Below are positions 1,561-22,978 of a stretch of DNA of 37,237 bases, in pieces. Every line of letters begins with the position of its first letter. Position 1 is the stretch's first letter. Position numbers and translations under genes: made by a program. The stretch is from Octopus bimaculoides. Its lineage: Eukaryota. The stretch lies in contig NC_068981.1 of assembly GCF_001194135.2 (NCBI RefSeq), forward strand, positions 28,635,055 to 28,672,291. The letters are read 5' to 3'. The notes beneath the pieces are model-generated. The model was not told where the DNA came from and did no database searches. It saw nothing but the letters and a program-made list of their open reading frames with translations.

Positions 1561-3224
1561 AAAACATTAAAAAAATCTAAAGTTGGTTGCATGAAATATC
1601 TAGATATAGGATTGTAATAATGGCATGGTAAGATACAGGCGCTGTGAGAATTTTAAAGTTTCTAGTTTTTTTTTTCTCAGATAAAATGCTCATTCATACT
1701 TACATACACATGCATATGTTGTCGCATACATACATACATACATAGATACATACATACATGTGTGCGTGTATGTGTGTGCGTGTATGTGCGTGCGTGTATG
1801 TGTGTGCGTGTGTGTGTGTCCGTGTGTGTATATAGTTTAGAACACCTGCAAAATGTTTTCAATCAAATGCAACAATGCAAGATATGAAAAATGAAAGAAA
1901 GAAAAAACGTTACAACCAAGGTTTCATGTTATTGTTTAATTACTATGGTGATAAGATTTTCTGTTTGAAATATGAAAATGACATTGATTTTATCTTTATT
2001 CTGTTATTTTGATTTCTATTCCTTCCTCTCCATTCTGACCAACCTAACCCTACCCACAGCAGATTCGTTAACATTTATGTACAAAAGATTTTCTTTTTTT
2101 TTTTACATGGATATTTTTACTACTGTTATCGTTTAATAAATGTATACAGAAAAGTCTCAAGAATAACCCTCGTATTTCCCATAGAAGAAAATATTGTTTA
2201 ACTTTATGATGAATCTCTCTCATCCTACAGACTGAACGCGGACGCACATACACACACACACACGCACACAACTACATACGTACACGCACAAATATATACG
2301 CATGCATATATGTATAATGTATGTATTTTTATATATGAATTCACGCACGCACACATACATACACACACTTGTATGTGTGTGTAAATAAAATGAGACAACA
2401 AAGCCAAGGCAGTGTGGAATTATCAGGACATTTACAAAAAGAAAGTTAGTCTTTCATAGTTAATCATATTTATCCAATATTTTCTAAAAAGGGAATATGT
2501 TAACATTCTTTTACCATGTTTATTATATGAAGTGCTGACTATTCTCGGTTTAGTTTCGGATTTAGAATTCTTATAAAGTATTCTTCTTTTGGCTTATGTG
2601 TGCATGTGTGTGTGTGTGCGTGCGTGCGTGTACAACAATAAATTTTCAGAACTAGAAATCAGAACAGATATTCCAGATTTATTCATTTTATATAAGATAC
2701 TGATACCTGAAACAGTAATTCTGACATGAATATTTTCACACGACAAGATTTGATAAGCGATTAAGATTTACATGACTCTTTGAAGCGGGGCGGTGAGCCG
2801 TTATGGAGCTGGTTTCGCTGGATAGACTACGTAGTTTCCAGAATCAGATTCAGATGGTGAATTGTCTTTGCGCATCCGTTTTCTAAAGACTCTTGAAATC
2901 ACTTCAAGTATCTTACTAAAACATCAGTTCATTTAGGTTGAAAATGACCCCTGTAAATTTGAACAGATTGCCTTGAAAACGAAACAGCTGAAATGAAAGA
3001 AAAAGCGGGGCAGCTGTTAGTATATAGTAAGCAAAAGACCGGTATAGAGAGGAAGAGAGGGGTAACGACATACATGCGCGCACGCGTGTGTGTGTGTGTC
3101 TCCGTTAATCACTTGCAGGCCAAATGTACAACAACCTGGCATATTTCGAAATTGAATTTGCATATCAAAGGTCGAATTTTAAAGGTAACCACATGCACAT
3201 TCCTGTTAATATTCATATTGAAAG

Positions 3225-3411
3225 AAGGCAGAGCACTAGCTAAATCGTTTGCTCATCGGGCGAAATGCTTCGTGTTAAAGTTCCGCAGAGGTTGACTTCG
3301 CCTTTGATCCTTTCATGGTCAATAAAATAACTACCAGTTGATCATTGAGGTCGATGTATTCAACTAAGCCCTTCCCACGAAATTGCTCGTCTAGTGCCAA
3401 AATTTGAAATC
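3225..3411 (+). mobile_element. SINE-B copy 1 of tandem array (degenerate)
   Basis: Degenerate head, central GCCTTTGATCCTTTCATGGTCAATAAAATAACTACCAG and tail GTGCCAAAATTTGAAA match the other copies in the window. Confidence 0.8.
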
Positions 3412-3636
3412 GAGACGGTGAGCCAGCAGAATCGTTAGCACGCCGTTTAAAAATGTCTGGTGGCAAGCCGTCCGTCATAATGTTCTGAGTTCAAATGCCA
3501 CCGAGGTCGACTTTGCCTTTTATCCTTTCTTTCGGGGTTGATGAAATGAGTACCAGTTGAGCACTGCGGTCGATTTAATCTATTTACTCCCTCCACCCTG
3601 AACTTGCTGGCTTTGTGCCAAAACTTGAAATCAATA
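3412..3636 (+). mobile_element. SINE-B copy 2 of tandem array (full length)
   Basis: Head GACGGTGAGCCAGCAGAATCGTTAGCACGCC (A-box-like), B-box-like GAGTTCAAATGCC, central domain and tail TGTGCCAAAACTTGAAA. Confidence 0.9.
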
Positions 3637-3673
3637 TCTACACGTAAAAAGCTGCCTTCTTTCAATGTGAATA

Positions 3674-3855
3674 TTAACAGGCCGGGCGAAATGCCTAGCG
3701 GCATTTTACCCATCTTCATGTTCTGCGTTCAAATTCTACCGGAGTCAAATTCGCCTTTCATTCTTTTGAAGTCGAGAATATTTATTAGCAGTTGAACATT
3801 TCTTGTTCCCTTCCCCGAAAGTGCTGGCCTTGTGCCACAATCTGAAAGCAGTATT
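3674..3855 (+). mobile_element. SINE-B copy 3 of tandem array (5' truncated)
   Basis: GCCGGGCGAAATGCCTAGCGGCATTT..GCGTTCAAATTC..GCCTTTCATTCTTTTG..GGCCTTGTGCCACAATCTGAAA. Confidence 0.8.
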
Positions 3856-3868
3856 CACATGGAAAATT

Positions 3869-4088
3869 ACGGTGTTGAGTTGATAGAATCGTTAACACGG
3901 CGAACAAAATGCCTAGCTGTATTTCGCCCGTCTTTACGTTCTGAGTGCACATTTCGCCCAGGTCGACTTTGTCTTTCATCCTTTGGAGGTCAATGAAATA
4001 AGTACCAGTTGAAAACTGAGTTCGATATAATCGATTTACCCGCTTCCCCGGAATTAGCAACCTTGTGCGAAAATTTGAAATCAATATT
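3869..4088 (+). mobile_element. SINE-B copy 4 of tandem array
   Basis: GAGTTGATAGAATCGTTAACACG..GGTCGACTTTGTCTTTCATCCTTTGGAGGTCAATGAAATAAGTACCAG..CCTTGTGCGAAAATTTGAAA. Confidence 0.85.
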
Positions 4089-4253
4089 CATATGGTAACA
4101 GCTGCTTAATAACCATTTGTTTATTAATTCAAATAGTATATATATCTGCACAATGCAAAAACGCAATTCAAAAACATAATAAATGTCTAAAGCGCAATAA
4201 TACTCTGCCAAAGAATGTTTGATAAAGTAAAAACTAAAAACAACAACAAAATA

Positions 4254-4626: not shown

Positions 4627-4867
4627 AATATTTATTTTGTTATATTAATAAACTTTGAAAATCAAGTTCCCCCTATATAAGTTCTCTTTATGCGAGTTCT
4701 CTCAATATAAGTTCAAATTCTTTTTAAAATACGGACAAAATACCTTATTTCATTGACACTGAGAAAATGCAAAATGAACCTAACCTCACAGATATTGGAA
4801 TCCAAACTAGAAAGAGCCCGAACAAATGCTGTAAGGCATTTGTTTCAGCCAGCTTGTTACATTAAAT

Positions 4868-5318
4868 AATAATAATGATAAGTTCAAATTTTGGCACATG
4901 GCCAGCAAGTTCGGTGGGTGGGCTAGGTCGATTACACCGACCTCCAGTGCTTAACTGGTACTTATTTTATCGATTTCGAAAGGATGAAAGGAGGAATTTG
5001 ATCCCAGAACTTAAGGATGGACGAAATACCTATTTCGTTATTGCCCACAAGGGGCTAAACATAGAGGGAACAAACAAGAACAGACGAACGGAATAAGTCG
5101 ATTACATCGACCCCAGTGCGTAACTGGTACTTAATTTATCGACCCCTAAAGGATGAAAGGTAAAGTCGACCTCGGCGGAATTTGAACTCAGAACGCAACG
5201 GCAGACGAAATACCGCTAAGCATTTCGCCCGGCGTGCTAACGGTTCTGCCAGCTCACCGCCGAAATACCGCTAAGTGTTTTTCCTGGCGTAGTAAAGATT
5301 CTGCCAACTTACCGCCTT
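4868..5318 (-). mobile_element. Older SINE-B (host), split by a nested insertion into 4868-5030 and 5262-5318
   Basis: Tail TTCAAATTTTGGCACATGG and central domain lie at left; head (GGCGGTAAGTTGGCAGAATC on minus) lies at right. The two halves rejoin at the duplicated GAAATACC (5023-5030 and 5262-5269). Confidence 0.85.
5031..5261 (-). mobile_element. Young SINE-B subtype with alternative tail, nested in an older SINE-B with an 8-bp TSD
   Basis: On minus, an intact head GGCGGTGAGCTGGCAGAACCGTTAGCACGCCGGGCG, B box GAGTTCAAATTCC and tail ..TTTAGCCCCTTGTGGGCAATAACGAAATA. Flanked by direct repeats of GAAATACC. Confidence 0.9.
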
Positions 5319-5334
5319 AATAATGATGATAATC

Positions 5335-5505
5335 TATAATTTTGGCCAAAGGCGAGTAATTTTCAGAAGATTGTCCTCCTCGGTACCATCTACACCAATA
5401 CATGACGGCTACGCAATTTCATGGACTACGGAGTGATGAAAATCAGATTTCGCCTTGGCAGCATTTGGAATTAGATCGCAGAGACGGAAGAAATACTGCA
5501 AGATG
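5335..5505 (-). mobile_element. Highly degenerate SINE-B
   Basis: AATTTGGCCAAAGG (tail) ... GATGAAAATCAGATTTCGCCTTGGCAGCATTTGGAATT ... GAAATACTGCAAG are weakly colinear with minus-strand SINE-B. Confidence 0.5.
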
Positions 5506-5875
5506 TATAATTATTACTGCAGCAAAGAGATCGGTACCAGTAAGAATATCCGTATGTTACAAATTATATAAATAAAAAGATAAAACAAAAGACAAACGAA
5601 AAAAATGATGTCAAGATAAGTTGAAGCACTAAGGGTTTAAGTACTATTAAGGGGTACTTTAAGGTTACTTGATAGGGGGTCCAGAATACTGAACCCGTTT
5701 TTATTATTTAGACTGATGTTATTGGTTACCGAGAGACTCGTCGCCTCCGTCCTCGTCTCCATTGTTGATTCGTTCTCTAAACTTTCTAAGGAACTTTTTG
5801 AATTTCATATTCTTTTGCCGTCGCCCGCTCTTTCTCTACATTGTCTTTTCTTGTCGGTATTTATCTACCCATAAT

Positions 5876-8623: not shown

Positions 8624-9639
8624 CACGTATGTATCTATTGTTAGGAAGTTATGAATTATAATGTTAAGCTAAACAGGTAAACAGTTTTTCATGCTGCACA
8701 ATAAGATCAGGATGAAGTCCATTGTGAAAAGGGTAGAAGCTAGGTGTTATTAGCTCAGACTGTGAAACTATAACAAATTGGCTAGACCTTGCAAACCTTT
8801 ATAAGGAGAGATAATTGTACTCCCTAGATTTTTTGTGACAGTTTTGTCTGTGAGACAAAGTTGTTCAATTGGATTCTGGGAATTATGATTTCTTGTTTAG
8901 TTTATGCACTTTGTGCTTTGTGTTAGGTATTTATGGATTTATTTTATGCTCCAGGAATTCGCCAGAACTTTTGTCAGACTTAAAATAATATTTATGTTAT
9001 ATCTGGGTCCTATGTTCGAAAACCGAATCGGTACTAAAATGGAAATCCAAATTTTTTGAATGCATATTTTTGAAAAACCAAATTTTTTGAGGCCAGGTTT
9101 TGTGTGAGGCCATTTTTGGTGAGACAAAAAATCAGGATTCTGAGTCCGAATTTGTGAACTGTATTTATGTTACCTTTGTAAATATTTTGACTGCACGTCT
9201 GGTGTGGCATTGATATTTTTGTTCGTGTATATATTTGTTTTTTGTGTGTAGGCTGCTTTTCCATGCTGACAATTGTTGATAATATTTTACAAAAAATGTC
9301 ATGCTGTATTGTTATTTTGGGTTCACTCTATCCTCATTCATTCTGTAAATTCGGGTTATGGTCACCAGGTCGTAACAGTATGTATGTATGTATGCATGCA
9401 TGTATGGATGGATGGATGTATAAAATCGCTGGTCTTTTGCTTAGAGTGCAAATCCGAGTAGCTTCCGGGTTTATATTTTTCGTATTGATGCGGCCTAGGC
9501 TTCAGGCGTTACTTGCATACGTGGCACTAGATGGTTGTTTGTTCTGCAAAAGAGAACAGCAAATATTCCCTATAGATAAGACGTTAACAACTGAGCCACA
9601 GAGAATAATTTCGTTGAGATTATTTTGGTCTTTAATTCT

Positions 9640-9940
9640 TCTGCTCGTTTAGAGCTGACCTGAGACACAAGTAGCACTTTCACTGCCTTATCGTGTCGCC
9701 ACAACTTGTAGTGGTTTTGGGCAAGTCTACAGAATTCGTTCGTGATATGGACAATGGTTTCGCCCCAATCTATTGCAGATGTCACACAGCGGAGACACTT
9801 GCTCATTTCGAAGATTGGCCTTATTTCAGGGAGAGAGTTCATATGCGGTACGAACATTTGATCACTATAAACAAATCATTTGTGCAGGCCTTTCGGCAAC
9901 TGCTGAACACTCACATGTCGTCTTCGACGGATGAGTTCAT
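9640..9940 (-). mobile_element. R4/Dong-like non-LTR retrotransposon fragment (CCHC zinc-knuckle region)
   Basis: ETIVHITNEFCRLAQNHYKLWRHDKAVKVL. Nucleotide match to 18950-19070 (TCGTGTCGCCACAACTTGTAGTGGTTT). The 5' end abuts (TTA)n. Confidence 0.8.
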
Positions 9941-9989: not shown

Positions 9990-10280
9990 AAGGCGGCGAG
10001 TTGACAGAATCATTAGCACGCCGGACAAAATGCTTAGCGGCATTTTGTCTGCAACTATGTTCTGAGCTCAAATTTCGCCATGGTCGACTTTACCTTTCAT
10101 TCTTTCGGAGTAGTATTTTTCTCAGTTTTATGTTCTAAACTCAAATTCAACTGAGGTTAACTTTGCAAACATCTTTTTGGGGTCGATAAAATAATTACTT
10201 GTTGAGAACTAGCATAGATGCAATTGATTAAACTCCGCCCACCAAAATTTCAAGCTACTTGCCTATCATAGAAAATATTA
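9990..10280 (+). mobile_element. SINE-B with internal duplication or nested partial copy
   Basis: The head AAGGCGGCGAGTTGACAGAATCATTAGCACGCCGG runs to CTTTCGGAG (10110). The sequence then restarts at TAGTATTTTTCTC..GTTCTAAACTCAAATTC and continues to a degenerate tail. Confidence 0.8.

Positions 10281-17203: not shown

Positions 17204-17263
<60 letters not shown>
17166..17263. repeat. (AAT)n microsatellite
   Basis: Direct reading. Confidence 0.95.
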
Positions 17264-17415
17264 CTGGAAATAGAGATAACTCGAATGTGGAATCTAAAAA
17301 CAGAAACAATTCCTATCATAGTAGGTGCCTTAGGTATAATAAAAAAATATTCAGACAAATACATAACAAAAATACCAGGACTTACAAATATATATAACAT
17401 ACAGAAAATTGCACT
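17264..17415 (+). mobile_element. R4/Dong-like retrotransposon, 5'-truncated C-terminal fragment running into a gap
   Basis: LEIEITRMWNLKTETIPIIVGALGIIKK..IQKIA is the typical end of an RLE domain. It starts immediately after (TAA)n. Confidence 0.8.
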
Positions 17416-17668
17416 NNNNNNNNNNNNNNNNNNNNNNNNNNNNNNNNNNNNNNNNNNNNNNNNNNNNNNNNNNNNNNNNNNNNNNNNNNNNNNNNNNNNN
17501 NNNNNNNNNNNNNNNNNNNNNNNNNNNNNNNNNNNNNNNNNNNNNNNNNNNNNNNNNNNNNNNNNNNNNNNNNNNNNNNNNNNNNNNNNNNNNNNNNNNN
17601 NNNNNNNNNNNNNNNNNNNNNNNNNNNNNNNNNNNNNNNNNNNNNNNNNNNNNNNNNNNNNNNNNNNG

Positions 17669-17850
17669 TATTTCGTCTGCCGTTACGTTCTGAGTTCAAA
17701 TTCCGCCGAGGTCGACTTTGCCTTTCATCCTTTCGGGGTCGATTAAATAAGTACCAGTTACGCATTGGGGTCGATACAATCGACTTAATCCGTTTGTCTG
17801 TCCTTGTTTGTCCCCTCTGTGTGTAGCCCCTTGTGGGCAGTAAAGAAAAA
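17669..17850 (+). mobile_element. Young SINE-B subtype with alternative tail (5' end in gap)
   Basis: Highly similar to the reverse complement of 5031-5261; tail ..GTAGCCCCTTGTGGGCAGTAAAGAAAAA. Confidence 0.9.
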
Positions 17851-18013
17851 GGTATTTCGTCTGTCTTTACGTTCTGAATTCAAATTCTGCCGACGTCGAC
17901 TTTGCCTTTCATCCTTTCGGGGTGGATAAATTAAGTACCAGTTGCATACTGGAGTCGATCTAATCGACTGGCACCCTCCCCGCAAATTTCGGGCCTTCTG
18001 CCCAGATTAGAAA
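17851..18013 (+). mobile_element. 3' part of an older SINE-B starting exactly at GGTATTTC
   Basis: GGTATTTCGTCTGTCTTTACGTTCTGAATTCAAATTC..GGCCTTCTGCCCAGATTAGAAA. Same junction as 5030/5031. Confidence 0.85.
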
Positions 18014-18284
18014 ATAATTATAATAATAATTAATTATTTTATCAGCAACAACAGCTCAAATACAAAACATGAATTGACATACAACATAAAAGATAAAAAC
18101 AGGACGATATAATGGGTTTTCGCGAGTACAGAATATAAATAACAGTTAAAAATTAAACAAATTAAACTCCCAATAAGGAAGCCGCTTTAAGTTCCTACCA
18201 ATGTATAGAGTACGTTTTTCTGCCCTAGGTGTTAGGAAGACACTCAGAAAAAGATGGAAAAAAACTGAAAGAAGATGCATATGA

Positions 18285-18286
18285 AG

Positions 18287-18341
<55 letters not shown>

Positions 18342-18399
18342 GGATAATAATAACAATAAACAACAACAACAATAATATTATTATTATCATTATTTCTTT
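18285..18399. repeat. (AAT)n/(AAC)n switching to (TTA)n microsatellite
   Basis: Direct reading; it flanks the 3' end of the Dong element. Confidence 0.9.
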
Positions 18400-19705
18400 T
18401 TTTATCACTGGTTTTGTTGGAACTCCTGGGGCCTTGCATGCGAATCGGCTACCTGCAGCCTACGGTACCATACTATCCGTTCTTTTAAGCTATCTAATAC
18501 TTTCCTGATTATTCTGGCCGTGCAAAAGAAGTAAAACTTTTGTAACTGTTCTACTGGGCACTCTATTCCAATTTCTTTTATATTCCTCTTGATGCTTTTT
18601 GATGCTGTCCACAAGGACCCAACAATAATTGGCACTATCTTCATCTTGTTCATTTTCCATAGCCGGGCTATATCGCATTTAAGAGGGCTGTATTGATCTA
18701 TTTTTTCTCTTCCTTCTTGATTATTCGTCGGTCAAGGGGCATGCAACAACAACTATATAACACATGTGGTGGATCTTGTCCACCATCACTTGATTCGGTC
18801 TGTTACGCTCTAACACCTGATCTGTTTGTATTGTAAAATCCCAGAGGATTTTGCTAGCCTACGACTCCGTCTCTCTGCGGTTTCTGCTCATACCACATCT
18901 TGACTCTCTTTGGCCCCCAGTTTTCGCACCGTTTCCACTGTAGCACTTTCGCTACCTGATCGTGTCGCCACAACTTGTAGTGGTTTGGGGCAAGTCTAGG
19001 GCATTCGTTCGTGATATGGGCAATGGTTTCATCCACTCTATTGCAGAGGCAGCACAGCGGAGACACATGCTCATTCCAAAGCTTGATCCTCCAATTCCTA
19101 GCCAAAGCTTGGTCTTGTGCTGTCACTATAGTGGTTTTGATCTCTTTTTTTTAGTGTTACTTTCTTCAGCCAATCCCACCCATTTTTTCCAGCAGCTTCT
19201 GTTGTGGCTAATGGAATTGATTGTGCAGTCCATTGTTGCGTAATTCTTCTTCGTGTTCTTTCTGTACTTCTTCCTTCGTTTTTCCTTTTTTTTTCTCTGC
19301 TTTCAATACTCTCTCGTTTCTATTTGACACTAGTAAGGTTTACTTACGTTGGACTAGGTATTTCGCTAAGCTCACGATTTCGATACGCACGCAGTCTTCC
19401 TCACTTATCAGTCCTTTTCCTCCATTTGCTCTTTTCATGTACAGGCAATCAGTGTCATCACGTGGATGATTGGCTCCATGCATCGTTAGGAGCCTTCTCG
19501 ATTTCCTGTCCATCTCCTTTAGCTCTTCCTCTGTCCACTTTAGGATTCCAGCGCCATACCGAGCTACTGTGACTGCGCGAGAGTTTATTGCCGAAATTAT
19601 GTTTTTGGCATTCTGCTCTGAAGCCAGTATTTTTCTCACTCGCCGCAGGTACTCTCTTTTTCCTTCATGTCGTTGTGTTTATTCCATCTGTCTCAAGTAT
19701 TATTA
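18400..19705 (-). mobile_element. 5'-truncated, decayed R4/Dong-clade non-LTR retrotransposon (late RT/thumb, CCHC zinc knuckle, restriction-like endonuclease)
   Basis: Colinear minus-strand peptides: YLRRVRKILASEQNAKNIISAIN..RYGAGILKWTEEELKEMDRKSRRLLTMHG..LYMKRANGGKGL; TAQDQALA..CCLCNRVDETIAHITNECPRL..RHDQVAK; KILWDFTIQTDQVLERNRP; KIVPIIVGSL..TARIIRKVL. TAA-type repeats lie at both ends. Confidence 0.92.
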
Positions 19706-19944
19706 CATAACAATAATAATTATACTTCATTTCAATATTGTGGAAATAAATATGTACATGAGAGTGGGTTTAAGAAGCTCAAATCGTGGTCTTGTAATTC
19801 AAATTCGTGGCTAATTGATCGAGTCGATATATATACATATATAGATGTATTGCATATATCTAGATATCCATACAAGACATTGAGTTACTCGTTTTCGACA
19901 ATCTCCTAATAACACGAGCTTCAGTTGATGTGTGCTATGATATA

Positions 19945-20035
19945 GACACGTGAACAAGATGTCATGCATTTAGGATCGAACCTGGAATCTTATGGTTCCG
20001 AATTGAATTTCTGAAACTCTTACGCCAAGCCTGCA
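19945..20035 (-). mobile_element. Very degenerate SINE-A head fragment
   Basis: GACACGTGAACAAGATGTCATGCATTTAGGATCGAACCTGGAATCTTATGGTT aligns loosely to 26668-26725. Confidence 0.45.
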
Positions 20036-20276
20036 TTTTATGTGTTCTATACATATGATGCTGAAGTCATGAAAGCATCACGTTTCTCACCTGAATAAAT
20101 GACAATATTATAGGTTCTGCACATGATTATTGAAAAGATAATTGTAAATTTCATTTTCTAACAGATTTTTTGAATAATCAATGAAATCTCATCTCGGTGT
20201 ACTTTTGTTTCACACAGCAAATTTTGTAGAGTGAGGTTTATGTCACGCAAAAAAGAAACGCAGTCGAAATAAATAA

Positions 20277-20346
<70 letters not shown>

Positions 20347-21632: not shown

Positions 21633-22049
21633 TATAAATATTCCAATATGTCTATATGCATGTACATACGTATATACGTATACATACATGTATATATGTG
21701 TGTGTGAGTGTAGAGACGCAAATAATATGCACGCACTCATATATAAGGTTTTGAATCTCAACACAAACATTTAGGACAATTTCAAATATAAGGTTCAAAC
21801 GTTCTTCAGAACACACCGAAATATAGCACCCCCCCCCGTCCCCAAACACACAGAGACACATGAAAATGGGATTCACCACAGAATTTTCTCGTTAAGGTAG
21901 AGGGAAAAAACTGGAAAAAATTCAACGAAGCTTCTCGTTTTATCCTTTTATTGAAACTCTGCAATGCCGTCATGAGTGATACTTTATTTGCACCATGTGG
22001 AAAATATTCCACCAATACTATGCTAATGATATCGTTATTATGTTTACAG

Positions 22050-22315
22050 TTCACCCAAGACTATCCCCCCACCACCGGAATAAGTCCCCTACAAAGTTCG
22101 AGATCACATCAAATAAGAACATTGCGACACAATTTCTTCATTGCAAATGGTCCTGCTCTTTTCAATGTTATTCCGAAAAAAGCTAAAGTAGAAAAAGACA
22201 CCACATCTTTCAAACGGTACCTGGACAAATTTCCCCAGGAAATATCGGATAAACCACCTACACCTGGATACGTCTCAACCAGCAACAACTATCTGCTTGA
22301 GAGGTCCATGGTGTC
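22050..22315 (+). mobile_element. 3' end of an APE-type LINE (CR1/L2/Jockey-group-like) ORF2
   Basis: RTLRHNFFIANGPALFNVIPKKAK..FKRYLDKFPQEISDKPPTPGY..NNYLLE resembles the ORF2 C-terminal motif (GPxLFNxLP..FKxxLDKF). The exact clade is not determinable. Confidence 0.75.
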
Positions 22316-22322
22316 CGAAATA

Positions 22323-22495
22323 ATATATATATACAACGGGCTTCTTTCAGTTTCCGTCTACTAAATACACAAGCAAAGCTTTTGTTCAATTGAGGCTATA
22401 ATAAAAAAAATACTTGTCCAAGTTTACACGCAATGGGACTGAACCCGGAACTATGTGGTTGGGAAGCAAGCTTCTCATTACACAGCCATACTTGC
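22323..22495 (-). mobile_element. SINE-A 5' half (tRNA-like head plus CORE-like region)
   Basis: On minus: TATGGCTGTGTAATGAGAAGCTTGCTTCCCAACCACATAGTTCCGGGTTCAGTCCC..GACGGAAACTGAAAGAAGCCCGTTG, then (TA)n. Confidence 0.85.
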
Positions 22496-22611: not shown

Positions 22612-22978
22612 GTCCATTCCACTCCACCTCCACTCCACCCCACCTCCACTCCACTCCACTCCACCCCACCTCCACTCCACTCCACTCCACCCCANNNNNN
22701 NNNNNNNNNNNNNNNNNNNNNNNNNNNNNNNNNNNNNNNNNNNNNNNNNNNNNNNNNNNNNNNNNNNNNNNNNNNNNNNNNNNNNNNNNNNNNNNNNNNN
22801 NNNNNNNNNNNNNNNNNNNNNNNNNNNNNNNNNNNNNNNNNNNNNNNNNNNNNNNNNNNNNNNNNNNNNNNNNNNNNNNNNNNNNNTCCACCCCACCTCC
22901 ACTCCACCCACATCCACTCCACCCACCTCCACTCCACCCCACCTCCACTCCACCCCACCTCCACTCCACTCCACCCCA
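22612..22978. repeat. (CTCCA/CCCCA)n pentanucleotide satellite spanning a gap
   Basis: Direct reading on both sides of gap 22695-22886. Confidence 0.9.

What the first reader, a model, noticed from the sequence alone, without database searches (positions are those of the whole stretch)
4868..5318. SINE-in-SINE insertion with an exact 8-bp TSD at GGTATTTC: candidate self-targeting, site-specific SINE
Seen: a near-intact young SINE-B with a distinctive tail (5031-5261) sits inside a decayed SINE-B and is flanked by GAAATACC direct repeats. The site lies between the host's A-box-like and B-box-like motifs. The same 3' junction recurs at 17850/17851 in a host carrying different mutations. Inference: this subtype is mobilised by a sequence-specific endonuclease, or by homology-primed TPRT, that targets its own parent family, making it a hyperparasite of SINEs. 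Established: some non-LTR clades (R2, NeSL, Tx1) are target-specific. The junction GAAATA-GG-TATTTC is itself a small inverted repeat.
Basis: partly seen in the sequence, partly recalled or inferred. Interest (0 to 1): 0.75.

Follow-up and report, generated by a model that had tools for sequence, protein, structure and literature searches.

The report
Young SINE nested inside older SINE
A young short retroposon (SINE) has copied itself into the middle of an older relative in an octopus-type genome, and a second copy 12.6 kb away joins a different relative at exactly the same nucleotide. This hints at, but with two copies does not prove, a SINE lineage that homes to one site in its own family.

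Summary
At 4880-5316 (minus strand) an older tRNA-like SINE with its own 15-nt flanking repeats is split by a full-length 231-nt younger SINE (5031-5261). The younger copy has a distinctive 3' tail ("tail A") and is flanked by an exact 8-bp duplication, GGTATTTC.

The only other tail-A copy in the window (17668-17850) abuts a different SINE at the same nucleotide. The two inner copies are 90.7% identical with no gaps. The two hosts are 81% identical with 22 gap columns and belong to different tail subfamilies. One composite amplified as a unit is therefore not supported.

The site is the 3' arm of the head's anticodon-like hairpin. Tail A is a genuine tail: its stem-loop covaries with that of ordinary tails. 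Ordinary copies sit in (ATT)n with tail/target microhomology, and an R2-superfamily LINE ending in (ATT)n lies in the window.

My best reading is a true nested retrotransposition plus a site preference, probably through homology-assisted priming.

Site specificity therefore rests on n=2.

The parts
5031..5261 (-). Inner, young, full-length 'tail-A' SINE (231 nt). It has a tRNA-like head, a body, and tail A with stem-loop GCCC-CTTGT-GGGC, ending ...AACGAAATA.
   Evidence: It is 6.6% from the window consensus with 9.6 CpG per 100 nt. Fold.
5262..5316 (-). Head (SINE positions 1-55) of the older host SINE. It is 80% identical to the inner head.
   Evidence: (D1).
4880..5030 (-). Body and tail B of the same host SINE, from position 48 onward. 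It carries a 15-bp deletion across the B-box-side region and ends ...GCCAAAATTTGAACTT.
5262..5269 (-). Target-site duplication, 5' copy (GGTATTTC in SINE sense).
5023..5030 (-). Target-site duplication, 3' copy (GGTATTTC in SINE sense).
5021..5038 (.). Junction inverted repeat ACGAAATA-CC-TATTTCGT (plus strand), formed by the host site and the end of tail A.
   Evidence: I4.
4867..4881 (.). Flanking direct repeat of the whole host element, 3' side, within an ATT-rich microsatellite.
   Evidence: (D5).
5318..5332 (.). Flanking direct repeat of the whole host element, 5' side. It lies in the ATT-rich tail of a still older SINE at about 5340-5545.
   Evidence: (D5).
17668..17850 (+). Second tail-A SINE copy (positions 49-231). 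Its 5' part is lost in the N gap 17416-17667.
   Evidence: It is 90.7% identical to the inner copy with no gaps.
17851..18010 (+). Second host: a SINE of another subfamily (tail B2, like the O. bimaculoides copy in L122), starting exactly at GGTATTTCG.
18150..20346 (-). Degenerate R2-superfamily LINE fragment with CCHC and PD-(D/E)xK-type C-terminal motifs. It ends ...AAAGAAATAATGATAATAAT(ATT)n. It is a candidate source of the machinery and of the tail end shared with B2 tails.

Best explanation
Shown:
- An older SINE had itself inserted into the ATT-rich tail of a still older SINE.
- It was later split by target-primed reverse transcription of a full-length transcript of a younger subfamily (tail A).
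- The antisense strand was nicked between SINE positions 47 and 48, and the sense strand between 55 and 56. This produced the 8-bp duplication GGTATTTC.
- These nicks bracket the upper 3' arm of the 13-bp anticodon-like hairpin of the head.
- The same 3' junction occurs in an unrelated host 12.6 kb away.

Inferred:
- The tail-A lineage prefers this site.
- The likely mechanism extends the family's normal mode. In that mode the RNA's 3' tail, (AUU)n-like, pairs with the nicked target strand.
- In the tail-A lineage the microsatellite tail is missing.
- A founder copy nested at this site would be transcribed into the host's GGUAUUU(U). Several copies carry a T4-5 run there that could stop Pol III.
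- The resulting RNA 3' end would be complementary to ...AAATACC-3' on the antisense strand of other SINE copies, so reverse transcription would start exactly at the end of tail A.
- An R2-superfamily LINE of the kind present in the window would supply the enzymes.
For: Nested insertion:
- The host halves are collinear with an exact 8-bp overlap.
- The inner copy starts at the family's first base, GGCGG.
- The host has its own flanking repeat (D5).
- The inner copy is much younger than the host: 6.6% versus 16.9% divergence, plus the host's deletion.

Recurrence with independent hosts:
- The inner copies are 90.7% identical with no gaps.
- The hosts are 81% identical with 22 gap columns and have different tail subfamilies (Fisher p=0.013).
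- Tail A occurs only twice in the window, both times at this junction.
- The chance of a second random hit at the same bond is about 1.6e-4.

Tail A is a true tail:
- Its stem-loop covaries with that of ordinary tails. 83% of cells are paired versus 63% in shuffles, and 0 of 500 shuffles reach the observed value.

Site and mechanism:
- The site is the 3' arm of the hairpin.
- Ordinary copies show tail/target microhomology in (ATT)n or TAAT.
- The LINE fragment's relatives match R2 reverse transcriptases and carry CCHC and PD..D..K motifs.
- Its 3' end resembles B2 tails and the end of tail A.
- Both occupied hosts carry the exact 9-mer GGTATTTCG. All unoccupied copies differ from it by at least 1 nt.
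Against: - There are only two tail-A copies. The second one's 5' junction is inside an N gap, so a host head and TSD there are unverified.
- No tail-A copy outside a SINE, no master copy and no transcript end were seen, so read-through is pure inference.
- At both loci the downstream run is TTT, not TTTT.
- As seen, the tail end is identical rather than complementary to the priming strand, so the homology model needs the extra read-through bases.
- A third junction at the same nucleotide (10112/10113) has no tail A and no host head. This suggests position 48/49 may be a breakpoint for another reason as well.
- The assembly could not be checked with reads.
Confidence: 0.5

Rival explanations
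1. Dedicated sequence-specific endonuclease. A LINE lineage of the R2 superfamily, with a restriction-like endonuclease, recognises the SINE head sequence around GC|GGTATTTC|G and mobilises tail-A SINEs there. No RNA-target homology is needed.
For: - R2-superfamily LINE fragments are in the window.
- This superfamily is known for target-specific lineages (established knowledge; PMC4640811 and PMC5035012 abstracts).
- The 3' junction is identical at two loci.
- Both hosts have the exact 9-mer.
Against: - No LINE with tail A was found in the window or in L122.
- Ordinary copies of the family insert with variable TSDs and microhomology rather than at one sequence.
- No LINE copy was seen at this site. 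The one possible case is hidden by the gap at 17416-17667.
Confidence: 0.15
2. Template-switch or breakpoint hotspot. SINE RNAs are often cut or abandoned at the loop/3'-arm boundary of the head hairpin. Reverse transcriptase then jumps to the 3' end of another RNA. This makes chimeras (upstream partner + SINE from position 48/49) in one event, with no targeting of DNA sites.
For: - A third junction at the same nucleotide has a different upstream partner: SINE positions 1-118 joined to GTATTTTTC at 10112/10113.
- A contig edge falls exactly at position 49, at 17668.
- At locus 2 the host and the inner copy are of similar age, 9.8% versus 6.7%.
- R2-type reverse transcriptases are known to jump between templates (established knowledge).
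Against: - It cannot explain locus 1. There the host head up to position 55 lies upstream of the inner copy with an exact 8-bp overlap, and the host is far older than the inner copy.
- It requires both tail-A RNAs to end at exactly the same base.
Confidence: 0.12
3. Composite (dimer) family. One ancestral nested structure, or a unit of [tail-A unit + 5'-truncated unit], was amplified as a whole.
For: - Both tail-A copies are followed by the same 9-mer and a SINE body.
- SINE units form head-to-tail arrays elsewhere in the window at 3190-4100.
Against: - The host parts differ much more than the inner parts: 81% with 22 gap columns versus 90.7% with none.
- The hosts carry different tail subfamilies.
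- Locus 1 has an internal TSD and a host head.
Confidence: 0.08
4. Coincidence or assembly artefact. Either these are two ordinary nested insertions that happen to share a site, or contigs were mis-joined through repeats in a gap-rich short-read assembly.
For: - SINEs make up a large share of octopus genomes (PMC13282606).
- The window has nine N gaps.
Against: - The chance of the same bond and orientation is about 1.6e-4.
- Each junction joins inner sequence to locus-specific, mutated host sequence.
- The two host halves match in age and overlap by exactly 8 bp.
Confidence: 0.05

Closest known systems
Target-specific non-LTR retrotransposons and their short derivatives: R2/R4/Dong, R1, the telomeric SART1/TRAS1, NeSL, Tx1/Keno/Utopia, and R2-derived SIDE elements.
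   Same: - The 3' junction is constant at a defined sequence.
- R2-superfamily LINE fragments are present in the window.
- In R1/R2/SART1, downstream target sequence carried on the RNA aligns the template on the nicked strand. This is the mechanism I propose here.
- Dong-type elements use (TAA)n, like the ordinary copies of this family.
   Different: - The target would be an interspersed SINE family related to the inserting element itself, not an rRNA, snRNA or spliced-leader gene or a microsatellite.
- No autonomous partner with this specificity has been identified.
- Only two copies have been seen.
Ordinary nested TE insertions, such as Alu-in-Alu and SINEs inserting into A-rich or microsatellite tails of earlier copies.
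   Same: - A younger element lies inside an older one with a TSD.
- In this window, ordinary SINE copies do land in the ATT-rich tails of earlier copies (5318-5340; the array at 3190-4100).
   Different: - The tail-A insertions are not in a tail. They are at one internal nucleotide position of the head hairpin.
- That position is used twice, in hosts of different subfamilies.
Dimeric or composite SINEs and template-switch chimeras: Alu-type dimers, tRNA dimers and trimers, and LINE-mediated chimeric retrocopies.
   Same: Two SINE-like units lie in the same orientation, joined without spacer.
   Different: - There is an internal TSD and a host head at locus 1.
- The second units are not the same sequence at the two loci.
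Octopus tRNA-derived SINEs OK/OR1/OR2 (Ohshima and Okada 1994, as cited in PMC4824008 and PMC4758252).
   Same: - It is an octopus-type genome. The same SINE is found at 84% identity in O. bimaculoides.
- It has a tRNA-like head with box-like motifs.
- The body recalls the CORE region. This is from memory and was not tested.

Membership tests
SINE (LINE-dependent short retroposon) | Short, many dispersed copies | tested here: met
   At least 14 copies or fragments of about 170-230 nt in the window, plus one in O. bimaculoides locus L122.
SINE (LINE-dependent short retroposon) | Target-site duplications flanking copies | tested here: met
   - 8-bp TSD of the inner copy.
- 15-nt flanking repeat of host1.
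- About 14-nt TSD of the L122 copy.
SINE (LINE-dependent short retroposon) | Head derived from a small RNA gene with an internal Pol III promoter | tested here: inconclusive
   - A-box-like and B-box-like motifs and an acceptor-like/anticodon-like fold are seen.
- ARAGORN and Rfam report no tRNA.
SINE (LINE-dependent short retroposon) | 3' tail shared with a partner LINE | tested here: inconclusive
   - The terminal about 20 nt of B2 tails and the last about 7 nt of tail A resemble the LINE end ...AAAGAAATAATGATAAT.
- The conserved tail stem-loop was not found in that LINE.
Target-site-specific non-LTR retroelement | Nearly all copies at one target sequence | tested here: inconclusive
   2 of 2 tail-A copies are at GGTATTTCG of a SINE head. 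A genome-wide count was impossible.
Target-site-specific non-LTR retroelement | Independent insertion events rather than copies of one locus | tested here: met
   The hosts differ in subfamily and are 81% identical with indels, against 90.7% and no gaps for the inner copies.
Target-site-specific non-LTR retroelement | Autonomous partner with a specific endonuclease found at the same site | not testable with these tools
   - R2-superfamily fragments are present.
- None shares tail A.
- The only candidate junction is inside the gap at 17416-17667.
Composite SINE amplified as a unit | The same second unit, with shared diagnostic mutations, in all copies and no internal TSD | tested here: not met
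Octopus OR-type / CORE-SINE | tRNA-Arg-derived head and CORE central domain | not tested
   No reference consensus was available. The resemblance is recalled from memory only.

The most novel reading that the evidence does not exclude
A SINE lineage swapped its microsatellite 3' tail for read-through sequence from the SINE it sits in. It thereby became self-homing: each new copy lands at the same hairpin arm of other family members and recreates the read-through context. This would be an R1/R2-like, RNA-guided target choice arising in a non-autonomous element, with dead SINEs as its safe harbour.
Probability: 0.25. Interest if true: 0.75.

Novelty: new variant of a known kind. Interest (0 to 1): 0.5.

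Why it matters
If the site preference holds genome-wide, it would show that target specificity in non-LTR retroposition can be set by the template RNA's 3' end alone. It would also show that this specificity can arise in a non-autonomous element by a single nested insertion.

That would give a natural, easily testable system: swap the 3' end and watch the target change. It would also explain how SINE-rich cephalopod genomes build nested and tandem SINE clusters.

If it does not hold, this is an ordinary nested insertion, useful only as a relative-age marker.

Tried and rejected
So there is no read support, no polymorphism or empty-site test, and no genome-wide flank count.

2. Metagenome scan with a 14-mer of tail A. 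It gave only chance hits, and none contains the SINE. A longer pattern would have been the better choice.

3. Genome contigs (2 scans) and viral contigs (1 scan). All gave 0 hits.

4. Protein database search with the antisense ORF that runs through tail A, hoping to find spurious gene calls on octopus contigs. It gave 0 hits.

5. LINE-fragment and helicase protein searches to reach octopus loci.
- Only one O. bimaculoides locus was obtained (L122). It holds one ordinary B2 copy.
- L121 and L123-125 are from other organisms and lack the SINE.
- P0022 and a window ORF are not on record.

6. Papers. No description of nested or self-targeting octopus SINEs was found. Sequence strings were absent from main texts. 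They were also absent from the stored part of an O. vulgaris transcriptome supplement.

7. Microhomology between the observed tail end and the priming strand. Rejected: the two are identical, not complementary. A sense-strand primer would pair but predicts the opposite orientation.

8. Direct PDB match of the degenerate LINE fragment. None was found. Classification rests on its homolog P0002.

Full report
**What is there**

The window is AT-rich eukaryotic DNA with nine N gaps. It is dense in one SINE family: BLAST of the inner copy finds 15 hits. The same SINE occurs at 84% identity in an O. bimaculoides chromosome locus (L122). A LINE fragment in the window is 72% identical over 18% of its length to an O. 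bimaculoides protein. The source is therefore an octopus-type genome, but the species was not determined.

**The nested structure at 4868-5318**

Read on the minus strand, the region contains:
- the host head, SINE positions 1-55 (5316..5262);
- a complete 231-nt SINE (5261..5031);
- the host continuing from position 48 (5030..4880).

GGTATTTC is present at both junctions. The repeat tools recover three features:
- the tandem 55-nt heads, at 80% identity;
- the 8-nt inverted repeat at the 3' junction;
- a 15-nt direct repeat flanking the entire host (4867-4881 and 5318-5332).

The host was therefore one element. It had itself landed in the ATT-rich tail of a still older SINE at about 5340-5545.

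**Relative ages**

Divergence from a consensus of 14 copies:

| Copy | Divergence | CpG per 100 nt |
|---|---|---|
| inner | 6.6% | 9.6 |
| c17668 (second tail-A copy) | 6.7% | 9.2 |
| host2 | 9.8% | 6.6 |
| host1 | 16.9% plus a 15-bp deletion | 5.2 |

The inner copy begins at the family's first base, GGCGG. A later full-length retrotransposition into the host, with an 8-bp TSD, is the simple reading.

**Recurrence at 17850/17851**

- Tail A (…AGCCCCTTGTGGGCA[A/G]TAA[C/A]GAAA…) occurs exactly twice in the window, against 0 expected. A looser search adds nothing.
- The second copy (17668-17850) is followed at 17851 by GGTATTTCG and a SINE body.
- The two tail-A copies are 90.7% identical over 183 nt with no gaps.
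- The two host bodies are 81% identical with 22 gap columns (Fisher p=0.013 on substitutions).
- The hosts carry different tails. Host2 shares the diagnostic GGAGTCGATCTAATCGACTGG…AGATTAGAAAA with the L122 copy, whereas host1 has …GTGCCAAAATTTGAAC.

With about 11 copies retaining the site in 34,350 non-N bases, a second independent random hit at the same bond and orientation has a probability of about 1.6e-4 (my arithmetic).

Two limits apply. The 5' part of the second copy lies in the gap 17416-17667, so a host head and TSD there are unverified. Host2 is also not much older than its insert.

**Is tail A a real 3' tail?**

Yes.
- It contains the stem-loop GCCC-CTTGT-GGGC. Ordinary tails have GGC-CTTGT-GCC, GGGC-CTTCT-GCCC or GCC-TTT-GGC.
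- On 12 tails, 83% of cells pair versus 63% in shuffles. There are 8 double-sided changes versus 2.8 expected, 0 of 500 shuffles reach the observed value, and the slid controls are far lower.
- Its end, …CGAAATA, corresponds to …TTGAAATC or …AGAAAAT in the other tails.
- What it lacks is the ATT/AAT-rich extension.

**The site**

In the RNA fold of the inner copy, positions 31-43 pair with 48-60 to form a 13-bp stem with the loop UAGC. The TSD, positions 48-55, is the upper 3' arm. The antisense-strand nick is at the boundary between the loop and the arm. Those motifs were read by eye, and tRNA and Rfam scans are negative.

**How the family normally inserts**

- Ordinary copies are flanked by ATT/AAT-rich repeats, or by a TSD that begins with the tail's own last bases. 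In L122 the element ends …AAATGA, followed by the TSD TAATCTCATCC.
- Units also form head-to-tail clusters at 3190-4100 and 5330-5560.
- A degenerate LINE at 18150-20346 (minus strand) ends …AAAGAAATAATGATAATAAT(ATT)n.
- Its homolog P0002 matches R2 reverse transcriptases in the PDB at E=1e-21.
- P0002 also carries a CCHC motif followed by KPD…D…K and a sub-threshold Pfam zf-RVT match. These features indicate a restriction-like-endonuclease LINE of the R2 superfamily.
- In O. vulgaris, Dong-R4 is reported as the LINE group with the most recently active insertions (PMC13282606). Whether the LINE in this window is the SINE's partner is inferred only from the shared terminal bases.

**Mechanism**

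- The priming strand at the nested site ends …GACGAAATACC-3'. The tail as seen ends …ACGAAAUA-3'. The two are identical, not complementary, which is why the junction is a palindrome (I4).
- Homology-primed TPRT therefore works only if the RNA extended into GGUAUUU. A copy nested at this site would produce such an RNA.
- Several family members have T4-5 at that point: c9985a GGCATTTTG, c10113b GTATTTTTC and L122 GGTGTTTTG. Such a run could end a Pol III transcript there.
- Such an RNA would pair with the antisense strand of other copies up to G48. This would explain four features: the exact tail end, the missing microsatellite, the fixed orientation, and the fact that both hosts carry the exact 9-mer while unoccupied copies differ.
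- This is inference. It parallels the use of downstream target sequence by R1, R2 and the telomeric LINEs (established knowledge).
- A dedicated endonuclease is the main alternative.

**What does not fit**

- At 10112/10113, a SINE (positions 1-118, 15.7% diverged) is joined to a much older SINE (29% diverged) that starts at GTATTTTTC, position 49. There is no tail A and no host head.
- The contig after the gap also starts at position 49.
- Position 48/49 may therefore also be a breakpoint for template switching or truncation. That model cannot account for locus 1.

**Limits**

- Public-collection scans and protein-based routes yielded only one further octopus locus.
- The stored part of an O. 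vulgaris transcriptome supplement contains no tail A.
- No paper found describes such targeting.

**Verdict**

- The nested insertion is very likely real (about 0.9).
- A site preference of the tail-A lineage is more likely than not (about 0.6-0.65 across mechanisms).
- The mechanism is open.
- Interest is moderate until the simple genome-wide tabulation is done.

Noticed in passing
window 9992-10268 (junction 10112/10113): A SINE (positions 1-118, about 16% diverged) is joined directly to a much older SINE (about 29% diverged, almost no CpG) that begins at GTATTTTTC. This is the same nucleotide position as the tail-A junctions, but there is no tail A and no host head. It is unexplained; possible causes are a template switch, a partial duplication or a deletion.
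   Followed up: partly
window 17263-17667: The C-terminal coding end of an R2-superfamily LINE (…IPIIVGALG…, plus strand, 17285-17415) runs into the 252-N gap. The contig after the gap starts exactly at SINE position 49 (GTATTTCG). The gap could hide the LINE 3' end, SINE heads, or a LINE sitting at the same site.
   Followed up: no
window 3190-4100: Four diverged SINE units lie head to tail on the plus strand with a spacing of about 218-238 bp. They share a linker after the tail (…GAAATCAATATTCAYATGG…). This is either a tandemly amplified SINE-plus-flank unit or repeated insertion into tails.
   Followed up: partly
window 3202-3231 and 3652-3681: A 30-nt inverted repeat, 97% complementary (CCTGTTAATATTCATATTGAAAGAAGGCAG), brackets the first two units of that SINE array. 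It could be the ends of a DNA transposon or an inversion breakpoint.
   Followed up: no
window 18150-20346 (-), 9570-9857 (-), 17263-17415 (+): There are three degenerate fragments of one LINE type with a CCHC motif and a restriction-like nuclease region. Relatives match R2 reverse transcriptases. The first fragment ends in a long (ATT)n run at about 18290-18400.
   Followed up: partly
window 5340-5545 (-): A very old SINE copy lies directly upstream of the host. The host's 5' flanking repeat lies in its ATT-rich tail, giving three generations of SINE in 700 bp, all in the same orientation.
   Followed up: partly
SINE tails, e.g. window 5040-5052, 17829-17841, 3606-3616; L122 7780-7795: A conserved 3'-tail stem-loop (loop CTTGT) with compensatory stem changes between subfamilies. 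It is a candidate recognition element for the partner reverse transcriptase.
   Followed up: yes
window 21951-22364 (+): An ORF whose end (…FFIANGPALFNVIPKKAKVEKDTTSFKRYLDKF…) looks like the C-terminus of a different LINE type.
   Followed up: no
window 22613-22978: A (TCCAC)n-based minisatellite lies on both sides of the N gap 22695-22886. Most other gaps sit in TA/CA-type microsatellites.
   Followed up: partly
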